Source: Paragordius varius
Lineage: Eukaryota > Animalia > Nematomorpha
NCBI GenBank assembly: GCA_964247055.1
Contig: OZ176052.1
Location: 8,060,001 to 8,124,000 of the forward strand
Length of the DNA: 64,000 bases
Direction: 5' to 3'
Shown: positions 4,547 through 60,700 of the stretch, one piece after another
Layout: each line of letters starts with the position of its first letter
How positions within the stretch are numbered: the stretch's first letter is position 1
Notes under the pieces: model-generated
What the model was told of the DNA's origin: nothing
Seen by the model: the letters and a program-made list of their open reading frames with translations, nothing else
Database searches by the model: none
Program-made: the position numbers and the translations under genes

Positions 4547-7121
4547 CAAAGCTTCGAATCGGTTCCTGATTTGGAACCGTACCGTTAGGGTGGAAACTCG
4601 GTTCAGGTTTTATTTACTAAAGAGTCACCCCGATTCTGATTGTTTGTAAATTCTTGGAACCAGCCCGGATTAGGTTCCACCAATATGAATAACTCCCAGA
4701 TTATTTTTAAAAAATAAAATGTACTCATTATTCATTATTGATTGTATAATAATGTTTTCCAATAAAATGGAAATACCATAATAATTTTAAAATTTGTTGT
4801 TTAAATATTATTTTTAAAAATATGATTTATGACAACATTTTTTTCGCGTATCCGATGGAAATAGAATTATAATGTTCACAATTTATTAAATTTCCTACCT
4901 TTAAAACTTGAAGAGAACCACGGTCATAATTATTTACCTAGATTATTATTATCTATAGATTAAGAATAGTTATCTTATTAATTATTGAATTTGGTAAAAA
5001 ACCATAAACTAAAGCGTCCATAGTTTCCCCCATAACGGAAAAAAATTGCCACACTATATATCAGTAGCACTCAAACTGCGGCCTACGGGCCACATGAGGC
5101 CCTCAGTTTTCGCTATATTACTTGTTGTGGAAGAGAATATTTTGAAGAGATTGAGAGAATATTTCCAGTACCTTGATTTGGGTGTTAGTGAAACGAATTT
5201 ACCCAAACCAGACTCTGTCTGCGCATATTGAAAGAATAACTTAAGAAGAAGTCCAGGTTGGTTTATAAGAGATGTCTATAAATAAAGCTGCAGGTCCATA
5301 CGATATTAACATAAACTGTTGGAAAATGGTATTGAATTTTTAAAGGATATTATTAATAATGTATTTACAACAGGTATGATACCATCCGTATGGAAGGAGA
5401 GTTTCACAGTTCTTATTATTAAAGGTAGATATAAATGATTGTAACAATTACAGAGGGATAAGATTGATGTCGCATACAATGAAGTTATTTGAGAAAATAC
5501 TAGAAAAGGGAATAAGAAAAATGGTTAGTAAAGGTAATCAATTTGGTTTTCTTCCGGGAAAGTCCACCATCGATCCGATTCACGCAGTAAGAATGCTAAT
5601 TAAAAAGCCTATAGAAATTAAAAAAGTGTTGCATTGTATTTTAATCTATATTGGAAAGGGGTTTGACAGGATACCCCGGAGTACAATATGGTGAAAAAAC
5701 GAAAAAACGTTTCTGAAAGTTACATAAAAATTATTAAAAGCATGTACGGCTCTCACTACAACAAAAAACACACCAAGTGCCAGATCCTAATGAAATAAAC
5801 CAAGGCGTCTATCAGGGATCAGCAATCAGTCCATTGGTATTTATGATATGCATGGACGAAATTTCAAAAGAAGTCAGGTATGGTGGATGGTATTTTCTTT
5901 ATGCAGACGACCTAATAGTGCTGTTAGACGAGTTGCATGAATTAAAAGAATTGGTGAGCAAATGGATTGATGCGTTACGACGATGCGGATTAAAAGTTAA
6001 TAAAAAGAGAACGGAACTTATAAATTTTGGTGGGAAAAAACGAGAAATGGAATTAGAAGAAGGTTGGGTATGAAAAGTTCAGGTGGATTGCAAATATTTA
6101 GGAGCAATTTTAGCAGCAGATGGTGCTTTAACACATGGTATAAATATAAGAATTCGAGATAGTTGGGCAAATTATATGAGATCATAAATGTTCTGTGATA
6201 TAAAAATATTGTCTAAAAGTCTATAAGATGTACAGTACTGTGTAACAGTCAACAATAATGTAAAACTCACAGACATGGACATTAAAGAAATCAGAAGAGA
6301 GGCACTTTGAGGTTACTAAAATGAGAATGCTTAGATTGATGTGCGGTGTAATGAGGAATGACAAGGTGAAGAATGTCTACATAAGAGGGTACGGAAATAA
6401 AACCGGTGACGCAAAAGATGATGGTAAATCGTTTAAGATGGTTCGGACATGTAGAAAGAGGAGATAAAAATTACATTGGTAAAACGATTGATGATTATAT
6501 TGTGAAAGGCAAGAGGGGAAAATGGCGACCTAAAACGCGATGGATAGATACAGTTAAGAGGGACATGGCAAAACTGTACCTAAAACGCGAGGACGCCATA
6601 GACAGGATTCTATGGCGAAATAGTTTACGGATATGACCGCTCGAAAGAGTGATATTATATAATGTAATTATTATTAGGCTCACAATATAAAAAGCAATTT
6701 TGCGCTAAAATGTTATATCTTAAAATCTGAGAAGTAGTTTGATGACCGAACTGCTTACAATTATTTTTTCAAGTTAATAAAGATATTCTCCATGAATGCG
6801 ATAGTTAACACAAATTTATTACTTACCTTTGTACTTATATATTTGGTTATTTAATTTTTGTAATAAATTTTGTTATATTCACAATTGTTGATATTTTGGT
6901 TTATATTTTATTAAGAATGTTGTATGGAAGTCATTTAAAGTCAGAAAACAAAATGAAACCGGTCCGAATGTAAAGAACCGATTACGAAATCATAATTTTT
7001 AATTTAATAAACTAACCCGATTTTGGTTCCTTTTGCTCAGTAACTATCCCCGTTTCGGTTTAAAAAAATTTTAATCATTCAAACTAGGTTCCACTTTTTT
7101 TCCAACCAGTTCGAAACCCTG
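4547..7121. mobile_element. hAT-like non-autonomous element containing an RTE LINE relic
   Basis: Imperfect TIRs CAAAGCTTCGAATCGG / CCAGTTCGAAACCCTG, flanking 8-mers TAATATAT / AAATATAA (6/8), and GGTTCC/GGAACC subterminal motifs at both ends. Confidence 0.5.
5118..6660 (+). mobile_element. RTE-clade (BovB-like) LINE relic: 5'-truncated, frameshifted RT and 3' end
   Basis: Fragments across frames: EENILKRLREYF; NKAAGPYDI; NNYRGIRLMSHTMKLFEKIL; QFGFLPGKSTID; QGSAISPLVFMICMD; LYADD; KYLG; NRLRWFGHVERGD; GKRGKWRPKTRWID; DRILWR. Multiple stops and frameshifts. Confidence 0.9.
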
Positions 7122-50546: not shown

Positions 50547-51064
50547 CACTTCATTACCTTTAGGAGTAGATTTATATCCCAGAGCGATTTAAGATAATAT
50601 CTTGAAAAGTATTATTGATATTAATTCGGATTTAAAAATATGCTTTCTCCTTTTAAGCGCATTATACAAAATTTTTTTTGGAAAAATATAAAATTGTAAT
50701 AAAATTCTCATCTCAAATTTTTTCGTAGCCATAGTTTTTACATGATTTTTTAAATCGCTAATTTAATTGGCAAATACAATTCTTATGGGTAGAAAATGTG
50801 AATAATTAACTAAAAAGCTTTCACGCCATATTTTAGAAAACTTCATATATTTTGATTTTAATATCAGCGGTTTGTTTCGAACGTGTTTTGGAGCTGTCTC
50901 AATTTTAGACTCTAGAAGCCAAAAAACACAAAAAATATAACCTTTTTATCTAATACACAAGAACAAATTTTGTTAATTAACTAAAATAACTTTCAAAACA
51001 GTATTATTCACAAAATTGAGCTCTGGGATATAAAACTACCCCAAAATGTAAACTTATGAAGTCT
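50547..51064. mobile_element. piggyBac-like MITE, related subfamily
   Basis: TTAA|CACTTCATTACCTTTAGGAGTAGATTTATATCCCAGAGC and an imperfect inverted copy GCTCTGGGATATAAAACTACCCC...TATGAAGTC. Confidence 0.55.
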
Positions 51065-51110
51065 TTAATGTCATCCCTTTTTTCGATACCTGGATACTGA
51101 CATATGCTAA

Positions 51111-51678
51111 ATGCAGCAAAATTTTAATCTCAAAGGTTTGATTAACTTAATTCTTTAGAAATTGTGGGATCTAATAGCTTTAGTGAGGTTAATATAAGGG
51201 CGGCTTGTAAAAAATGTGGATTTGGTATTTTAACTTATAATAAATAGTGGGACATTTGCCTTTCCAATGCCGAAATTATTTAACACTCAATGGATCTCAA
51301 AATAAAATGATATTAGATGTTAGCAGTACATCATCGGACGATGGCGGTGCAAATTTTATATCCCCTTTATCACAATTACGCGATGGTATATATTTTAATT
51401 TATTTTCAGACGAAGCCAAAATTGCTGAGATGAAAAAAATGTTGAAAGATAGTTTTCAATTAAATAAACCTATCATTAAAGATGATGCTGTATTATCAAC
51501 TTTAAAGAAATCTATGAAGAAAAGACTAAAAAAGAAACTTAAAAAGTTGGAAGATGATTCTTCCGAATCGGATCAACCCTCAAAGAAACATAAAAAATCA
51601 CATAGACACAAAAAATCGCATAAAAAACATAAAAAACATCATTCAAAAGATTGTCGAAATAATAAAGATAGAAATTGA
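51111..51678 (+). CDS. SREK1IP1: SREK1-interacting protein 1-like (p18SRP) CCHC zinc-knuckle, Lys/His-rich protein, 165 aa model
   Basis: Exons 51111-51135, 51159-51224, 51248-51385, 51410-51678. The spliced product contains RAACKKCGFVGHLPFQCRN and ILDVSSTSSDD, matching recalled SREK1IP1 RAGCKKCGYPGHLTFECRN..VLDVSSTSSED, plus a basic KKHKK tail. The model requires 23-, 23- and optionally 24-nt introns. Confidence 0.85.
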
Positions 51679-52019
51679 TCTTTATCAATAAAAAATTTAT
51701 TTATAATAAATGGCCGTACATAACATTTATATCAAGTGTCACCAACTTTTTGGACCGCTGGCCATTTTGAAATAAAAATTTGCAGTACATATAAGGTTAT
51801 AATAATTCACCGTTTGATTATGCATCATTTTTTTGAAAACATCGACACCAATGATAAATGACAATAACTCATGGTATCCCCCATCGTATTGGTGAACCAA
51901 TTTTCAGAGTACCGTGAGCTATAGAAGTATTGGAAAAAAACTATAAAAAACTTCTGCTAAAATTTTTATGATTTCAAATTTTTGTAAGATATATAATATA
52001 TTATCCTGTTATCATCATT

Positions 52020-57752: not shown

Positions 57753-60700
57753 ATGAAGAAAACTTTACGTTGTCCATCAAGCCATAAACTAAGGCTATTC
57801 CTTATAATTATTTCATGTTTGATATTATTCTCCACCATTGTTGAAACACAAAGACAATTTGGTTATAACGTTAAGCATAAATGTCCAAAGTTTCCCGTTA
57901 ATCGAGAATGTACATGTCAAGCAGGTATATCTGTTTTTACAGGAGATGATGTCTATGATGTAATTTGTTTCGACATTAAAAGTGGGGAAGAATTTAATGA
58001 AATCATTGATGCATTTGAAAATGATGCTCAGGCACACAAATATCCGATTCTCCTTTCATTTCATCGGAGTAAATTCGATCACGTAGATGTGCTTGGTAAG
58101 CCACATTCGACGATTCAGATTCAGGAACTTCATTTCTTACACACTCAATTTGCCAATATGAGTGAAAGTGCTTTGAAACATTTAAGCCCTAACCTGCAAA
58201 TCCTAACTATCATAGATAACTCATTGTCTCCAAAACTTCAAACAAATAATATACGAGCACTCTTTCGAGCCATCGGATTCTTAAACAATCTACAACAAAT
58301 CGAAATTTCACTACCTGATCTCTTAGATATTGATATGTCATTCTTCAACAATTTTCCTCGCCTCGAAAAATTGTTACTTATATTTCCCAGTTTACGCATA
58401 GTTCATCATAATCGTATGATTGATTTGCCCAAATTGAAAATGTTCTCACTAGTTAGTAAATTGCCATATGTTTTGAGGGGATTTGTGAGTCTGCCAAAAC
58501 TCTCGTACTTCTCATATACGTCTAATATGTTACGTGGCTTAGGGAGGGAAACTCTTGTAAATGCATCAGCTCTGGAAGAGCTTGATTTAAGTAATTGTCA
58601 ACTTGAATACATAGCTTCAGGTGCATTTGATTCAAATCATAAAATATCTCATTTGGATTTATCGAATAATCATTTGAAATGGTTGCCGCCTCTGTGTACA
58701 AAACATTCGTCAACGGAAAAAAATGAAAAAAATGAGAAGCGGGCCGCCACCGGATCTTCAGTAGGACGACGCCAATCAAAGACAAGCCTCACGTCAGAAA
58801 CAATAGATGAATCTGATGTGGAAACTGAGACTCCAGAAGAAAAAGCTGAAGAGATTTTAGATTTAAAAGAGTCGGTCACAGACAATGAGGGCGGCACTAA
58901 TGACGAGAGTGACAATGATGTCGATAGGGGATCAAACACCGTGTCTTTGCATTTGACAGTGCTAAATTTGGGTAAAAACTTCTTTACTGGTCATACCCTA
59001 AATGAATCTACCTTAGCACATTGCAATCATATTAAAACTTTATATTTAAGTGATAATTTATTAAGCCATATACATGCGGATTTTCTTAATTCTGCTCGTC
59101 ATACCTTACGAAATTTGCATCTTGAAAGAAATAAAATAAAGCATATACCATTAGATGTTTTGTCAAAGTTAACTAATTTATCCAATCTAAACATGGCAGG
59201 AAATTATATAACTCGAGTTCCCCATTTTGCATTTCGCAATAATCCTAATCTTAAAATATTGGATCTTACATCTAACCGAATTTCTGAATTTCCTTTGAGC
59301 TCCATTGAAAAATCTCAGCAAACCATAATGGAAATACGACTAGCCCATAATCAATTGACAGAATTTAAATTTGAAGATCTTGAATTCTTTAATAATATAA
59401 CATCACTGGATTTAAGCTTCAATAAAATCACCAGTGTCAAAGGAATTGTTGATCTATCATTGGTTACACACCACATCTTTAATATCAATTTGGTTGGTAA
59501 GTAATTAATTTTTAATTAATTTTTGGTATATTAACATAGTGGATAAAATTGAGGCCCAAATAAATATAGCGATTAAAATATAATCAAATAAATATATTAG
59601 GATCTCATGGTGCCTTTGATTTTGGGCCTTACAAGTCATTTAAGAAAAAAATGGGCTTTTGTTGAATTTGCACCATATTAAAAATACGCAAAATCAGCTC
59701 TTATTGTGCTGAATATAATTTTTAAAATATATATTTGGGCAAAAAAATATTTCTATCAAATTATTTACATGTAGGCTTCCCTAGTCTCAAATTTTCCTCT
59801 AAGGGTTAGTTTTTAAATACACGTAAAAATGCCGTAATTGCGCGATTTTTTAAATATGCTAGAAAGATATCAAAATAAGTTATTTTGGAAAAAATGCATA
59901 TTTTGCTTCAAATTTAGAATTTGGTGAAGCGTATTTTATGGTTTTTTGAAGCATTATGGAAACCATTTACAATTTAAATAACATATTTGTGTGCTCTCAA
60001 ATTTAATATAATCTTTAACAAAAGGTGATTGATATTTCGATAGCATTGAAATATATAGACAAAGTTTTTTTTATATCTTTAACAATGTTTACATTTCCAC
60101 CATGCTTGAAAATACCATAAAATACGCTTCAATAATATTTCACTAAACTTAAATTTGTGATCAAAACATGATTCTTTCTAAAATAACTTAATCAAATGCT
60201 GTTAACATATAATAACTACTGTTATCGCGCAATATGGCCTTCTTAAGTTGATTATTTTGAGTCCAAAATTTTGAAACTTATCGTGCCTCTATCATAAATT
60301 TAATAATGTTTGCTTTTGAATTATAGTTTATAATATAATCGTATGATGTTTTCTGGAATTAATCATTCAACTATCACCAAATAAATTTATTTGGCCAATT
60401 GAATTTGGTGATTTTTGATATCGAGCAATTACCACAATAAATGACTCGTAAATCCCAAAAGCACCATGGAAACCCTAATACATTTTCAATCTGAATAAAT
60501 ATAATTTCTACATTATATGTGCATTAATAGTCATCATTCTTTTTATTTTTTTAGCGAAAAGATAAAAATATTGTTTATAATTGATAATAATAATAAATGT
60601 TTTTTGTTTCCATTTAAGCATTAAATAATTCTAAATGATTAGCCTCTAAAACCTAATTAGCTATATATTTTTGAAATTATTATTGTATTTTTAACAATAT

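What the first reader, a model, noticed from the sequence alone, without database searches (positions are those of the whole stretch)
51111..51409. Ultrashort 23-, 23- and 24-nt GT-AG introns in a conserved animal gene
Seen directly: GTTTGATTAACTTAATTCTTTAG (51136-51158, 23 nt), GTATTTTAACTTATAATAAATAG (51225-51247, 23 nt) and GTATATATTTTAATTTATTTTCAG (51386-51409, 24 nt), all phase 1, each with a central TTAAC/TTAAT branch-like motif. The first two end in an in-frame TAG if unspliced. Removing exactly 23 nt at the second restores the canonical CX2CX4HX4C knuckle (CKKCGF-V-GHLPFQC). From memory, human SREK1IP1 has a phase-1 intron at this same codon, which needs checking. Most animal spliceosomes need introns of roughly 40-70 nt or more; introns in the 20s are known mainly from ciliates, nucleomorphs, microsporidia and dicyemids. 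Neighbouring genes here have introns of 64 nt to over 4 kb, so this lineage may run a spliceosome that handles both a ~23-nt class and long introns. The third intron is in frame and could be retained.
Basis: partly seen in the sequence, partly recalled or inferred. Interest (0 to 1): 0.8.

Follow-up and report, generated by a model that had tools for sequence, protein, structure and literature searches.

The report
Three tiny introns in hairworm SREK1IP1
A small conserved gene (SREK1IP1) of what is almost certainly a horsehair worm is split by three very probably real introns of only 23, 23 and 24 bases, at the same codons where a mussel has 0.5-1.3 kb introns. This adds a third animal group to the two published as having introns under 30 bases, though the cutting was not seen in RNA here.

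Summary
A SREK1IP1-like gene lies at 51111-51678 (+). It reads as one 165-codon frame only if GT..AG segments at 51136-51158 (23 nt), 51225-51247 (23 nt) and 51386-51409 (24 nt), all phase 1, are removed.

- **Same sites in other animals.** The hairworm Gordionus has introns at the same three codons and phase (38, 43, 46 nt). So do a tapeworm (35, 38, 162 nt) and a mussel (1347, 1110, 488 nt).
- **Not an assembly fault.** Contigs from four DNA runs (two studies) cross the three segments. No length change was listed there.
- **Variants.** Variants are denser in the segments than in the exons. Four of five in exons 1-3 are synonymous.
- **A class, not a one-off.** In the same genome I found 24 more GT..AG introns of 21-31 nt in 11 GTPase and kinase genes. 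One Rab gene has introns of 23, 26, 1391 and 31 nt.
- **Splicing machinery.** U1 and U2 look canonical.

No RNA holding the gene could be reached, so splicing is inferred. I found no paper in the held library reporting such introns in Nematomorpha. This scan had already flagged the same class elsewhere in this genome.

Verdict: real, and a new member of a known kind.

The parts
51111..51135 (+). Exon 1 (start codon plus 7 codons plus the first base of a split codon)
   Evidence: Translation. 6 of 8 residues match the N-terminus of Gordionus P0001. The variant at 51131 is synonymous in this frame.
51136..51158 (+). Intron 1: 23 nt, GT..AG, phase 1
   Evidence: The Gordionus intron at the same site is 38 nt and starts with the same five bases. 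A phase-1 intron also lies near the N-terminus in Mytilus (1347 nt) and Hymenolepis (35 nt). DNA contigs of three runs cross it with no gaps.
51159..51224 (+). Exon 2 (66 nt): first half of the CCHC knuckle
   Evidence: Translation. 60% identity to P0001 residues 6-30.
51225..51247 (+). Intron 2: 23 nt, GT..AG, phase 1, in the codon after CKKCGF
   Evidence: A phase-1 intron sits in the same codon in Gordionus (43 nt), Hymenolepis (38 nt) and Mytilus (1110 nt). Gap-free DNA contigs of X2 and X5 cross it.
51248..51385 (+). Exon 3 (138 nt): second half of the knuckle and the DVSSTSSD block
   Evidence: Translation. Matches P0001. The variants at 51279, 51312 and 51327 are all synonymous.
51386..51409 (+). 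Intron 3: 24 nt, GT..AG, phase 1, in frame and free of stops
   Evidence: A phase-1 intron sits at the same codon in Gordionus (46 nt) and Mytilus (488 nt). After removal the junction reads LRD-D-E, as in Gordionus. The variants at 51406 and 51407 keep the AG.
51410..51678 (+). Exon 4: lysine/serine/histidine-rich tail, ending in stop TGA at 51676-51678
   Evidence: Translation. Aligned to P0001 up to residue 160. It lacks the fourth, phase-2 intron present in Gordionus (3448 nt) and Mytilus (15185 nt).
51687..51692 (+). AATAAA, a likely polyadenylation signal
   Evidence: Read directly, 9 nt after the stop. Its function is inferred.

Best explanation
These are three genuine, constitutively spliced U2-type (GT-AG) introns of 23, 23 and 24 nt in the single-copy SREK1IP1 orthologue of a horsehair worm. 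They are ancient bilaterian introns that have shrunk to near the smallest size I saw in this genome (21 nt). Removing them gives an mRNA for a 165-residue protein with one CCHC zinc knuckle, an acidic serine block and a basic tail. They belong to a genome-wide class of 21-31-nt introns with minimal signals: GT then A/T then mostly T at the 5' end, a T-rich 3' end with T at -3, and about 80% A+T. This class is handled by an apparently ordinary spliceosome that also removes kb-sized introns from the same genes. Shown here: the sequence anatomy, the shared intron sites, the DNA confirmation, the existence of the class, and canonical U1 and U2 genes. Inferred: actual excision from RNA, where the branch point lies, and recognition of the whole tiny intron as one unit (intron definition).
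For: - **Frame and homology.** They are restored only by removing the three segments.
- **Shared sites.** Introns of the same phase sit at the same codons in Gordionus (38/43/46 nt), Hymenolepis (35/38/162 nt) and Mytilus (1347/1110/488 nt). The Gordionus annotation pipeline used RNA-seq.
- **DNA support.** Contigs of four DNA runs (three samples, two studies) cover the segments, and gap-free pieces cross each one.
- **Variants.** There are 5 in 70 intron bases against 5 in 229 bases of exons 1-3. Four of those five exon variants are synonymous. All GT and AG ends are kept.
- **Copy number.** The gene is single copy in the 110.6-Mb assembly.
- **The class.** 24 further GT..AG introns of 21-31 nt lie in 9 small-GTPase and 2 kinase genes. 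Each restores near-invariant motifs. One Rab gene has introns of 23, 26, 1391 and 31 nt.
- **snRNAs.** U1 has the canonical 5' end and U2 has GUAGUA intact.
Against: - No RNA was seen. No run on record as RNA holds the gene, and the laid runs are DNA.
- No transcript-derived protein of this species is in the protein collection, for this gene or for RhoA.
- Intron 3 is in frame and free of stops, so the frame alone does not force its removal.
- The single exons are too short to hit Pfam.
- The species was not identified. The assignment to Nematomorpha rests on one best protein hit and on palindromes in the mitochondrial DNA.
Confidence: 0.9

Rival explanations
1. The locus is a decaying pseudogene. 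The three segments would be chance insertions or frameshifts, not introns.
For: No expression data could be found. The single exons give no Pfam hit.
Against: The 'frameshifts' sit exactly at introns shared with three other animals, with the same phase and GT..AG ends. The split codons encode the same residues as in Gordionus. It is the only copy in the genome. Four of five variants in exons 1-3 are synonymous. The same kind of segment interrupts RhoA, Rab11, Ral, PLK and other essential genes.
Confidence: 0.03
2. This is an assembly artefact. The introns would really be longer and were collapsed or deleted in the assembly.
For: None found. The window is flanked by very high-copy repeats at 50836-51103 and 51841-51974.
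Against: Independently assembled contigs of four DNA runs from two studies cover the region. Gap-free pieces span 51067-51296, 51328-51626, 51048-51214 and 51048-51297, and no length change between 51111 and 51680 appears among the listed ones (25 rows were not shown).
Confidence: 0.01
3. Introns 1 and 2 are spliced, but the 24-nt intron 3 is often or always kept. That would give a protein with eight extra residues.
For: It is in frame and free of stops, so a retained form would escape nonsense surveillance.
Against: The Gordionus intron at the same site is 46 nt and must be spliced, and the spliced junction here reproduces the Gordionus sequence. Two other 24-nt stop-free in-frame introns lie inside the invariant cores of RhoA and Ral, where eight extra residues are absent from the orthologue compared. 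Its variants keep GT and AG.
Confidence: 0.15
4. The segments are removed or skipped by something other than the spliceosome, such as DNA elimination in somatic cells as in ciliates, or ribosomes bypassing them.
For: The size is like that of the smallest ciliate eliminated sequences (from memory). No RNA data are available.
Against: All 27 segments checked start with GT and end with AG. They sit at sites where other animals have ordinary introns. No joint that removes one of the three segments is among those listed in the four DNA runs (159 joints were not shown).
Confidence: 0.01

Closest known systems
Ultra-short introns of myxobolid Myxozoa and of Dicyema japonicum (Hadjez et al., Mol Biol Evol 2026, PMC13644364)
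   Same: Spliceosomal GT-AG introns under 30 nt in animals, at conserved positions between conserved exons, clustered with other tiny introns in the same gene. Splice signals are reduced and U2 is conventional. All are parasitic lineages.
   Different: This is another phylum (Nematomorpha, Ecdysozoa), which that paper does not mention. Tiny introns here share genes with introns of 1.4 kb. The genome-wide median is unknown and probably not under 30 nt, since many introns of 43 nt to 3 kb were seen. A T-rich 3' end with T at -3 is kept, whereas that paper reports only 'AG' for D. japonicum and the non-myxobolid myxozoans.
Tiny introns of ciliates (Paramecium about 25 nt, Stentor 15-16 nt) and nucleomorphs
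   Same: The size range, GT..AG ends and high A+T content (Paramecium and Stentor sizes from PMC5014332 abstract and from PMC13644364; the rest from memory).
   Different: In those organisms nearly all introns are tiny. From memory, Paramecium avoids introns of length 3n that lack a stop. Here 4 of 7 such introns have no in-frame stop, though the sample is small.
Short introns at the same sites in relatives and other parasites: Gordionus (38-46 nt) and the tapeworm Hymenolepis diminuta (35-38 nt)
   Same: The same three intron sites and phases in the same gene.
   Different: These introns stay above the roughly 30-nt limit cited for animals in PMC13644364. The window's species has 23-24 nt.
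SREK1IP1 / P18SRP protein family (Pfam PF13917, zf-CCHC_3)
   Same: N-terminal CCHC knuckle, DVSSTSSD block and a basic K/S/H-rich tail. E = 1.4e-22 and 51% identity to Gordionus 'SREK1IP1-like'. Searching with that Gordionus protein finds SREK1IP1 of insects, a mussel and tapeworms.
   Different: It lacks the fourth ancestral intron. Function was not tested. The human protein's link to the splicing regulator SREK1 is from memory.

Membership tests
U2-type (GT-AG) spliceosomal intron | GT at the 5' end and AG at the 3' end | tested here: met
   All three segments, and all 24 further tiny introns.
U2-type (GT-AG) spliceosomal intron | Removal restores one reading frame and collinear homology | tested here: met
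   The split codons give E, V and D, as in Gordionus.
U2-type (GT-AG) spliceosomal intron | Same position and phase as introns in orthologues | tested here: met
   Gordionus, Hymenolepis and Mytilus. Vanessa and Megachile have lost these introns.
U2-type (GT-AG) spliceosomal intron | Absent from mature RNA | not testable with these tools
   No run on record as RNA holds the gene. The only read-laying run returned DNA contigs. No transcript-derived protein is in the collection.
U2-type (GT-AG) spliceosomal intron | Branch-point adenosine recognised by U2 snRNA | tested here: inconclusive
   U2 with GUAGUA intact is present. No localised branch motif was found: TTAAY is at chance level, and A is spread over positions 6-16 from the 3' end.
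Animal ultra-short intron class as defined in PMC13644364 | Length of 30 nt or less | tested here: met
   23, 23 and 24 nt here. 22 of the 24 others are 21-29 nt and two are 31 nt.
Animal ultra-short intron class as defined in PMC13644364 | Reduced splice-site motifs (5' 'GTa'; for the 3' end the paper reports only 'AG' in D. japonicum and the non-myxobolid myxozoans) | tested here: inconclusive
   5' end: GT, then A 15 / T 9, then T 19 of 24, and G at +5 in only 5 of 24. 3' end: T at -3 in 18 of 24 and T at -5 in 17 of 24. So the 5' end is reduced but the 3' end keeps a short T-rich tract.
Animal ultra-short intron class as defined in PMC13644364 | Genome-wide median intron length under 30 nt | not tested
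   No annotation is available. Many introns of 43 nt to 3 kb were seen among kinase and Ras genes, so the median is probably higher.
SREK1IP1 (PF13917 zf-CCHC_3) | C-x2-C-x4-H-x4-C knuckle followed by the DVSSTSSD block | tested here: met
   Present once intron 2 is removed. Conserved in P0001, P0005, P0010, P0025 and P0028.
SREK1IP1 (PF13917 zf-CCHC_3) | Score above the Pfam cut-off | tested here: inconclusive
The exons scanned singly give no PF13917 hit, because the knuckle is split by intron 2. The orthologues carry PF13917 in the precomputed column.
Nematomorpha (source organism) | Closest proteins from a hairworm; mitochondrial genes with long coding palindromes | tested here: met
   The best hit is Gordionus sp.. 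Mitochondrial contig C44 has palindromes of 2x131 nt and 2x97 nt inside open frames, the trait described for Nematomorpha in the PMC6649704 abstract. The species was not identified.

The most novel reading that the evidence does not exclude
Horsehair worms, or at least this species, are a third independent animal lineage with a discrete class of 21-31-nt spliceosomal introns. The class would have arisen by shrinkage of ancient bilaterian introns: 0.5-1.3 kb in a mussel, 38-46 nt in Gordionus, 23-24 nt here. Unlike a simple picture of genome compaction, the tiny introns share genes with kb-sized introns in a repeat-rich genome of 110 Mb or more. They include stop-free introns of length 3n that would have to be spliced faithfully, all with canonical U1 and U2. 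The lower size limit of the animal spliceosome would then be set by the lineage rather than by the machinery.
Probability: 0.75. Interest if true: 0.75.

Novelty: new member of a known kind. Interest (0 to 1): 0.65.

Why it matters
A 2026 survey of 51 animal genomes concluded that introns under 30 nt occur only in myxobolid cnidarians and one dicyemid (PMC13644364). A hairworm would be a third, ecdysozoan and again parasitic, lineage.

It would also offer a useful contrast, because the same genes hold introns of 23 nt and 1.4 kb. That lets one ask what sets the minimum intron size and how the branch point fits into about 20 nt.

There is a practical side too. Gene finders and read mappers whose minimum intron length is set above about 20-25 nt would truncate or frameshift such genes. 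Hairworm gene catalogues and reports of gene loss may therefore be affected (inference).

Tried and rejected
- **RNA evidence.** The look-up of sequencing runs listed no holder on record as RNA.
- **Transcript-derived proteins.** I looked for same-species transcripts in the protein collection using exon 3-4 of this gene and exon 2 of RhoA. There were none; the best RhoA identity was 88%.
- **Pfam on single exons.** No zf-CCHC_3 hit.
- **Synteny with Gordionus.** Nothing matches beyond the gene itself.
- **P0002.** This 89-aa gene call looks as if it starts and ends inside introns at sites 2 and 3, but no DNA was served for its contigs.
- **Retrocopy.** A processed copy lacking the introns would have shown splicing. 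There is none, as the gene is single copy.
- **TTAAC/TTAAT as a branch signal.** Rejected as a class feature.
- **'Kinase genes lack tiny introns'.** This was my first reading. I rejected it after finding in-frame introns of 21 and 24 nt hidden inside kinase hits. The exon-by-exon table under-detects them.
- **Species identification.** Not achieved, because no named DNA collection for animals was available.
- **Literature.** Six searches, and reading of the Gordionus genome preprint and a Nematomorpha comparative-genomics preprint, found no mention of hairworm intron sizes.

Full report
**What is in the sequence**

The window is AT-rich, at 23-33% G+C. At 51111-51678 on the + strand lies a small gene whose coding sequence is broken into four pieces:
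- 51111-51135 (25 nt)
- 51159-51224 (66 nt)
- 51248-51385 (138 nt)
- 51410-51678 (269 nt, ending in stop TGA at 51676-51678)

Between them lie segments of 23, 23 and 24 nt. Each starts with GT and ends with AG, and each is in phase 1. Left in place, the first two run into an in-frame TAG. The third is in frame and has no stop. With all three removed, the frame is 165 codons. The zinc knuckle C-x2-C-x4-H-x4-C is then formed across the second junction.

**What the gene is**

The joined, spliced protein was not sent to any search tool and that step was left out. My scripts only formed junction peptides of about 12 codons on each side to check frames.

- The single exons are too short for Pfam.
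- The open frame over exons 3-4 finds 'SREK1IP1-like' of the hairworm Gordionus sp. m RMFG-2023 (P0001, E = 1.4e-22, 51% identity).
- tblastn of P0001 against the window matches exon 1 (6 of 8 residues), exon 2 (60%) and exons 3-4 (52%). Exons 1, 2 and 3 lie in three different frames.
- A search with P0001 returns SREK1IP1 of insects, a mussel and tapeworms.
- The gene is single copy in the 110.6-Mb assembly, where the window is C3:8060001-8124000.

**The source organism**

The best protein hit is a hairworm. The mitochondrial contig C44 carries loop-less palindromes of 2x131 nt and 2x97 nt inside open reading frames. This is the trait described for Nematomorpha mitochondria (PMC6649704 abstract). 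The species itself was not identified.

**Are the three segments introns?**

Five lines of evidence say yes.

1. *Shared intron sites.* I mapped the exact exon structure of orthologues on their own contigs:

| Species | Intron lengths (nt) | Phases |
|---|---|---|
| This window | 23 / 23 / 24 | 1, 1, 1 |
| Gordionus | 38 / 43 / 46 / 3448 | 1, 1, 1, 2 |
| Tapeworm Hymenolepis diminuta | 35 / 38 / 162 | 1, 1, 1 |
| Mussel Mytilus coruscus | 1347 / 1110 / 488 / 15185 | 1, 1, 1, 2 |

The second intron lies in the codon right after CKKCG[F/Y] in all of them. The third lies in the codon after the SPL..... block in the window, Gordionus and the mussel. The tapeworm's third intron, also phase 1, lies in a region that does not align well. 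Gordionus intron 1 even starts with the same five bases as the window's. A butterfly has other introns and a bee has none. These are therefore ancient bilaterian introns.

2. *Split codons.* G|AA, G|TG and G|AC encode E, V and D, the residues at the same places in Gordionus.

3. *Independent DNA.* The four runs that hold the stretch are DNA. They come from three samples and two studies, one under a second organism label. Their contigs cover the flanks and the segments. Gap-free pieces span 51067-51296, 51328-51626, 51048-51214 and 51048-51297, and none of the listed length changes falls inside the gene (25 rows were not shown). Collapsed longer introns are therefore ruled out.

4. *Variants.* There are five in the 70 intron bases and five in the 229 bases of exons 1-3. 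Four of those five exon variants are synonymous in the proposed frames and the fifth is V to L. Every GT and AG is kept.

5. *The gene model in the relative.* The Gordionus annotation came from a pipeline that used RNA-seq. I cannot say that reads support these particular introns.

**Is there a class of such introns?**

I tested this myself rather than lean on earlier notes.

- A six-frame search of the genome with the Ras family showed many collinear exon hits only 1-26 nt apart.
- I fetched 16 loci. By frame, GT..AG ends and restoration of near-invariant GTPase motifs, I fixed 21 introns of 21-31 nt in nine genes, including Rab11-, Rab8/10-, Rab18-, Rab1-, Rab6-, RhoA- and Ral-like genes.
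- One Rab18-like gene has five in a row (21, 21, 22, 22, 22 nt).
- One Rab gene has introns of 23, 26, 1391 and 31 nt. Tiny and kb-sized introns therefore share a gene, and tiny ones are not confined to the 5' side of long ones.
- The RhoA 24-nt intron is in frame and stop-free. BLASTP against Tribolium Rho1 shows exactly an 8-residue gap there.
- Kinase domains at first seemed to lack the class. Looking inside hits with internal stops revealed in-frame introns of 24 nt (CHK1-like) and of 21 and 24 nt (PLK-like), so the hit table under-detects them.
- Other introns seen measure 43-90 nt and 130 nt to 3 kb.
- In the 24-intron set (21 Ras-family plus the three here), lengths run from 21 to 31 nt with most at 21-26 nt.

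**Signals and machinery (for the intron statistics)**

- The 5' end is GT, then A (15) or T (9), then T (19 of 24). G at +5 is rare (5 of 24).
- The 3' end has T at -3 (18 of 24) and T at -5 (17 of 24).
- A+T content is 81.5%.
Composition-matched shuffles give 5.7 +/- 2.0 (P = 0.18), so it is not a class signal.
- Adenines are spread over positions 6-16 from the 3' end, with no sharp branch site.
- The genome has canonical U1 (ACUUACCUG) and U2 (GUAGUA intact) genes.
- It also has a sub-threshold U12 candidate with an intact 5' end.
- This fits conventional U2-dependent splicing, as argued for myxozoans in PMC13644364.
- Seven of the 24 introns have a length divisible by three, and four of those seven have no in-frame stop.

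**What is missing**

RNA is missing. No run on record as RNA holds the gene. No transcript-derived protein of this species exists in the protein collection for this gene or for RhoA. Splicing is therefore inferred, strongly, from comparative anatomy.

**Comparison with what is known**

Hadjez et al. (Mol Biol Evol 2026, PMC13644364) state that introns under about 30 bp were thought absent from animals. Among 51 genomes they found them only in myxobolid Myxozoa and Dicyema japonicum. Nematomorpha are not mentioned. The Gordionus genome preprint and a Nematomorpha/Mermithidae comparative preprint never mention introns. Further full-text searches found nothing on hairworm intron sizes. The case here is therefore a new member of a known kind.

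Earlier notes of this scan had already flagged the same class at many other places in this genome. One note claims RNA support at another locus, which I did not test.

**Verdict**

I put 0.9 on genuine ultrashort introns. The pseudogene, assembly-artefact and non-spliceosomal readings are each at 3% or below. Frequent retention of intron 3 remains an open side question, at about 15%.

Noticed in passing
window 50836-51103 and 51841-51974: These stretches are very high-copy repeats, judged by summed contig depth in four DNA runs, with many loose ends at 51004-51054. The first repeat ends about 57 nt before the start codon of the gene.
   Followed up: no
G000 C3:257000-527000; contig ends C4:7260, C6:8570, C8:6857, C6:10107039 (loci L034-L048): At least 15 U2-like copies lack the first ~40 nt (no stem I, no GUAGUA branch-binding site) and instead begin in AT-rich sequence. 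Many lie at contig ends. This may be a U2-derived repeat family.
   Followed up: partly
G000 C2:11982449-11982646 and C2:11950601-11950798 (L031, L032): Two full-length U2 variants (154-155 bits) keep GUAGUA but have a changed stem I and changes just upstream of GUAGUA. The two canonical copies score 178 bits.
   Followed up: no
L026:3077-3165 (G000 C6, about 606254): A U1 copy next to the canonical one reads ACUUACUUG instead of ACUUACCUG at the end that binds the 5' splice site.
   Followed up: no
G000 C5:10606517-10606667 (-), L028: The only U12 candidate scores 34 bits (cut-off 53), but its first ~30 nt match the U12 consensus almost perfectly. The minor spliceosome may be present but divergent.
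   Followed up: partly
G000 C44 (L049 = C44:5980-10320): This is the mitochondrial contig. Loop-less palindromes of 2x131 nt and 2x97 nt lie inside open frames (genetic code 5). About ten tandem 72-nt palindromic units sit in the same open frame upstream of cox1.
   Followed up: partly
L006 (G000 C5:5361184-5361601): A Rab18-like gene has five consecutive introns of 21, 21, 22, 22 and 22 nt within about 420 nt.
   Followed up: yes
L007, L018, L006 and window 51386-51409: Four of the seven tiny introns whose length is a multiple of three have no in-frame stop. These are the RhoA 24-nt, Ral 24-nt, Rab18-like 21-nt and SREK1IP1 24-nt introns. That is unlike what I recall for Paramecium, though the sample is small.
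   Followed up: partly
window 51410-51678 compared with L001:4502-7949 and L020: The window's gene has lost the fourth ancestral, phase-2 intron. It is 3448 nt in Gordionus and 15185 nt in Mytilus.
   Followed up: yes
window 5777-6073 (+) and 57753-59504 (+): A reverse-transcriptase fragment (PF00078, E = 2.4e-15) and a 583-codon open frame of a leucine-rich-repeat protein (LRR_8, E = 8e-32). The other long open frames in the window have no Pfam hit.
   Followed up: no
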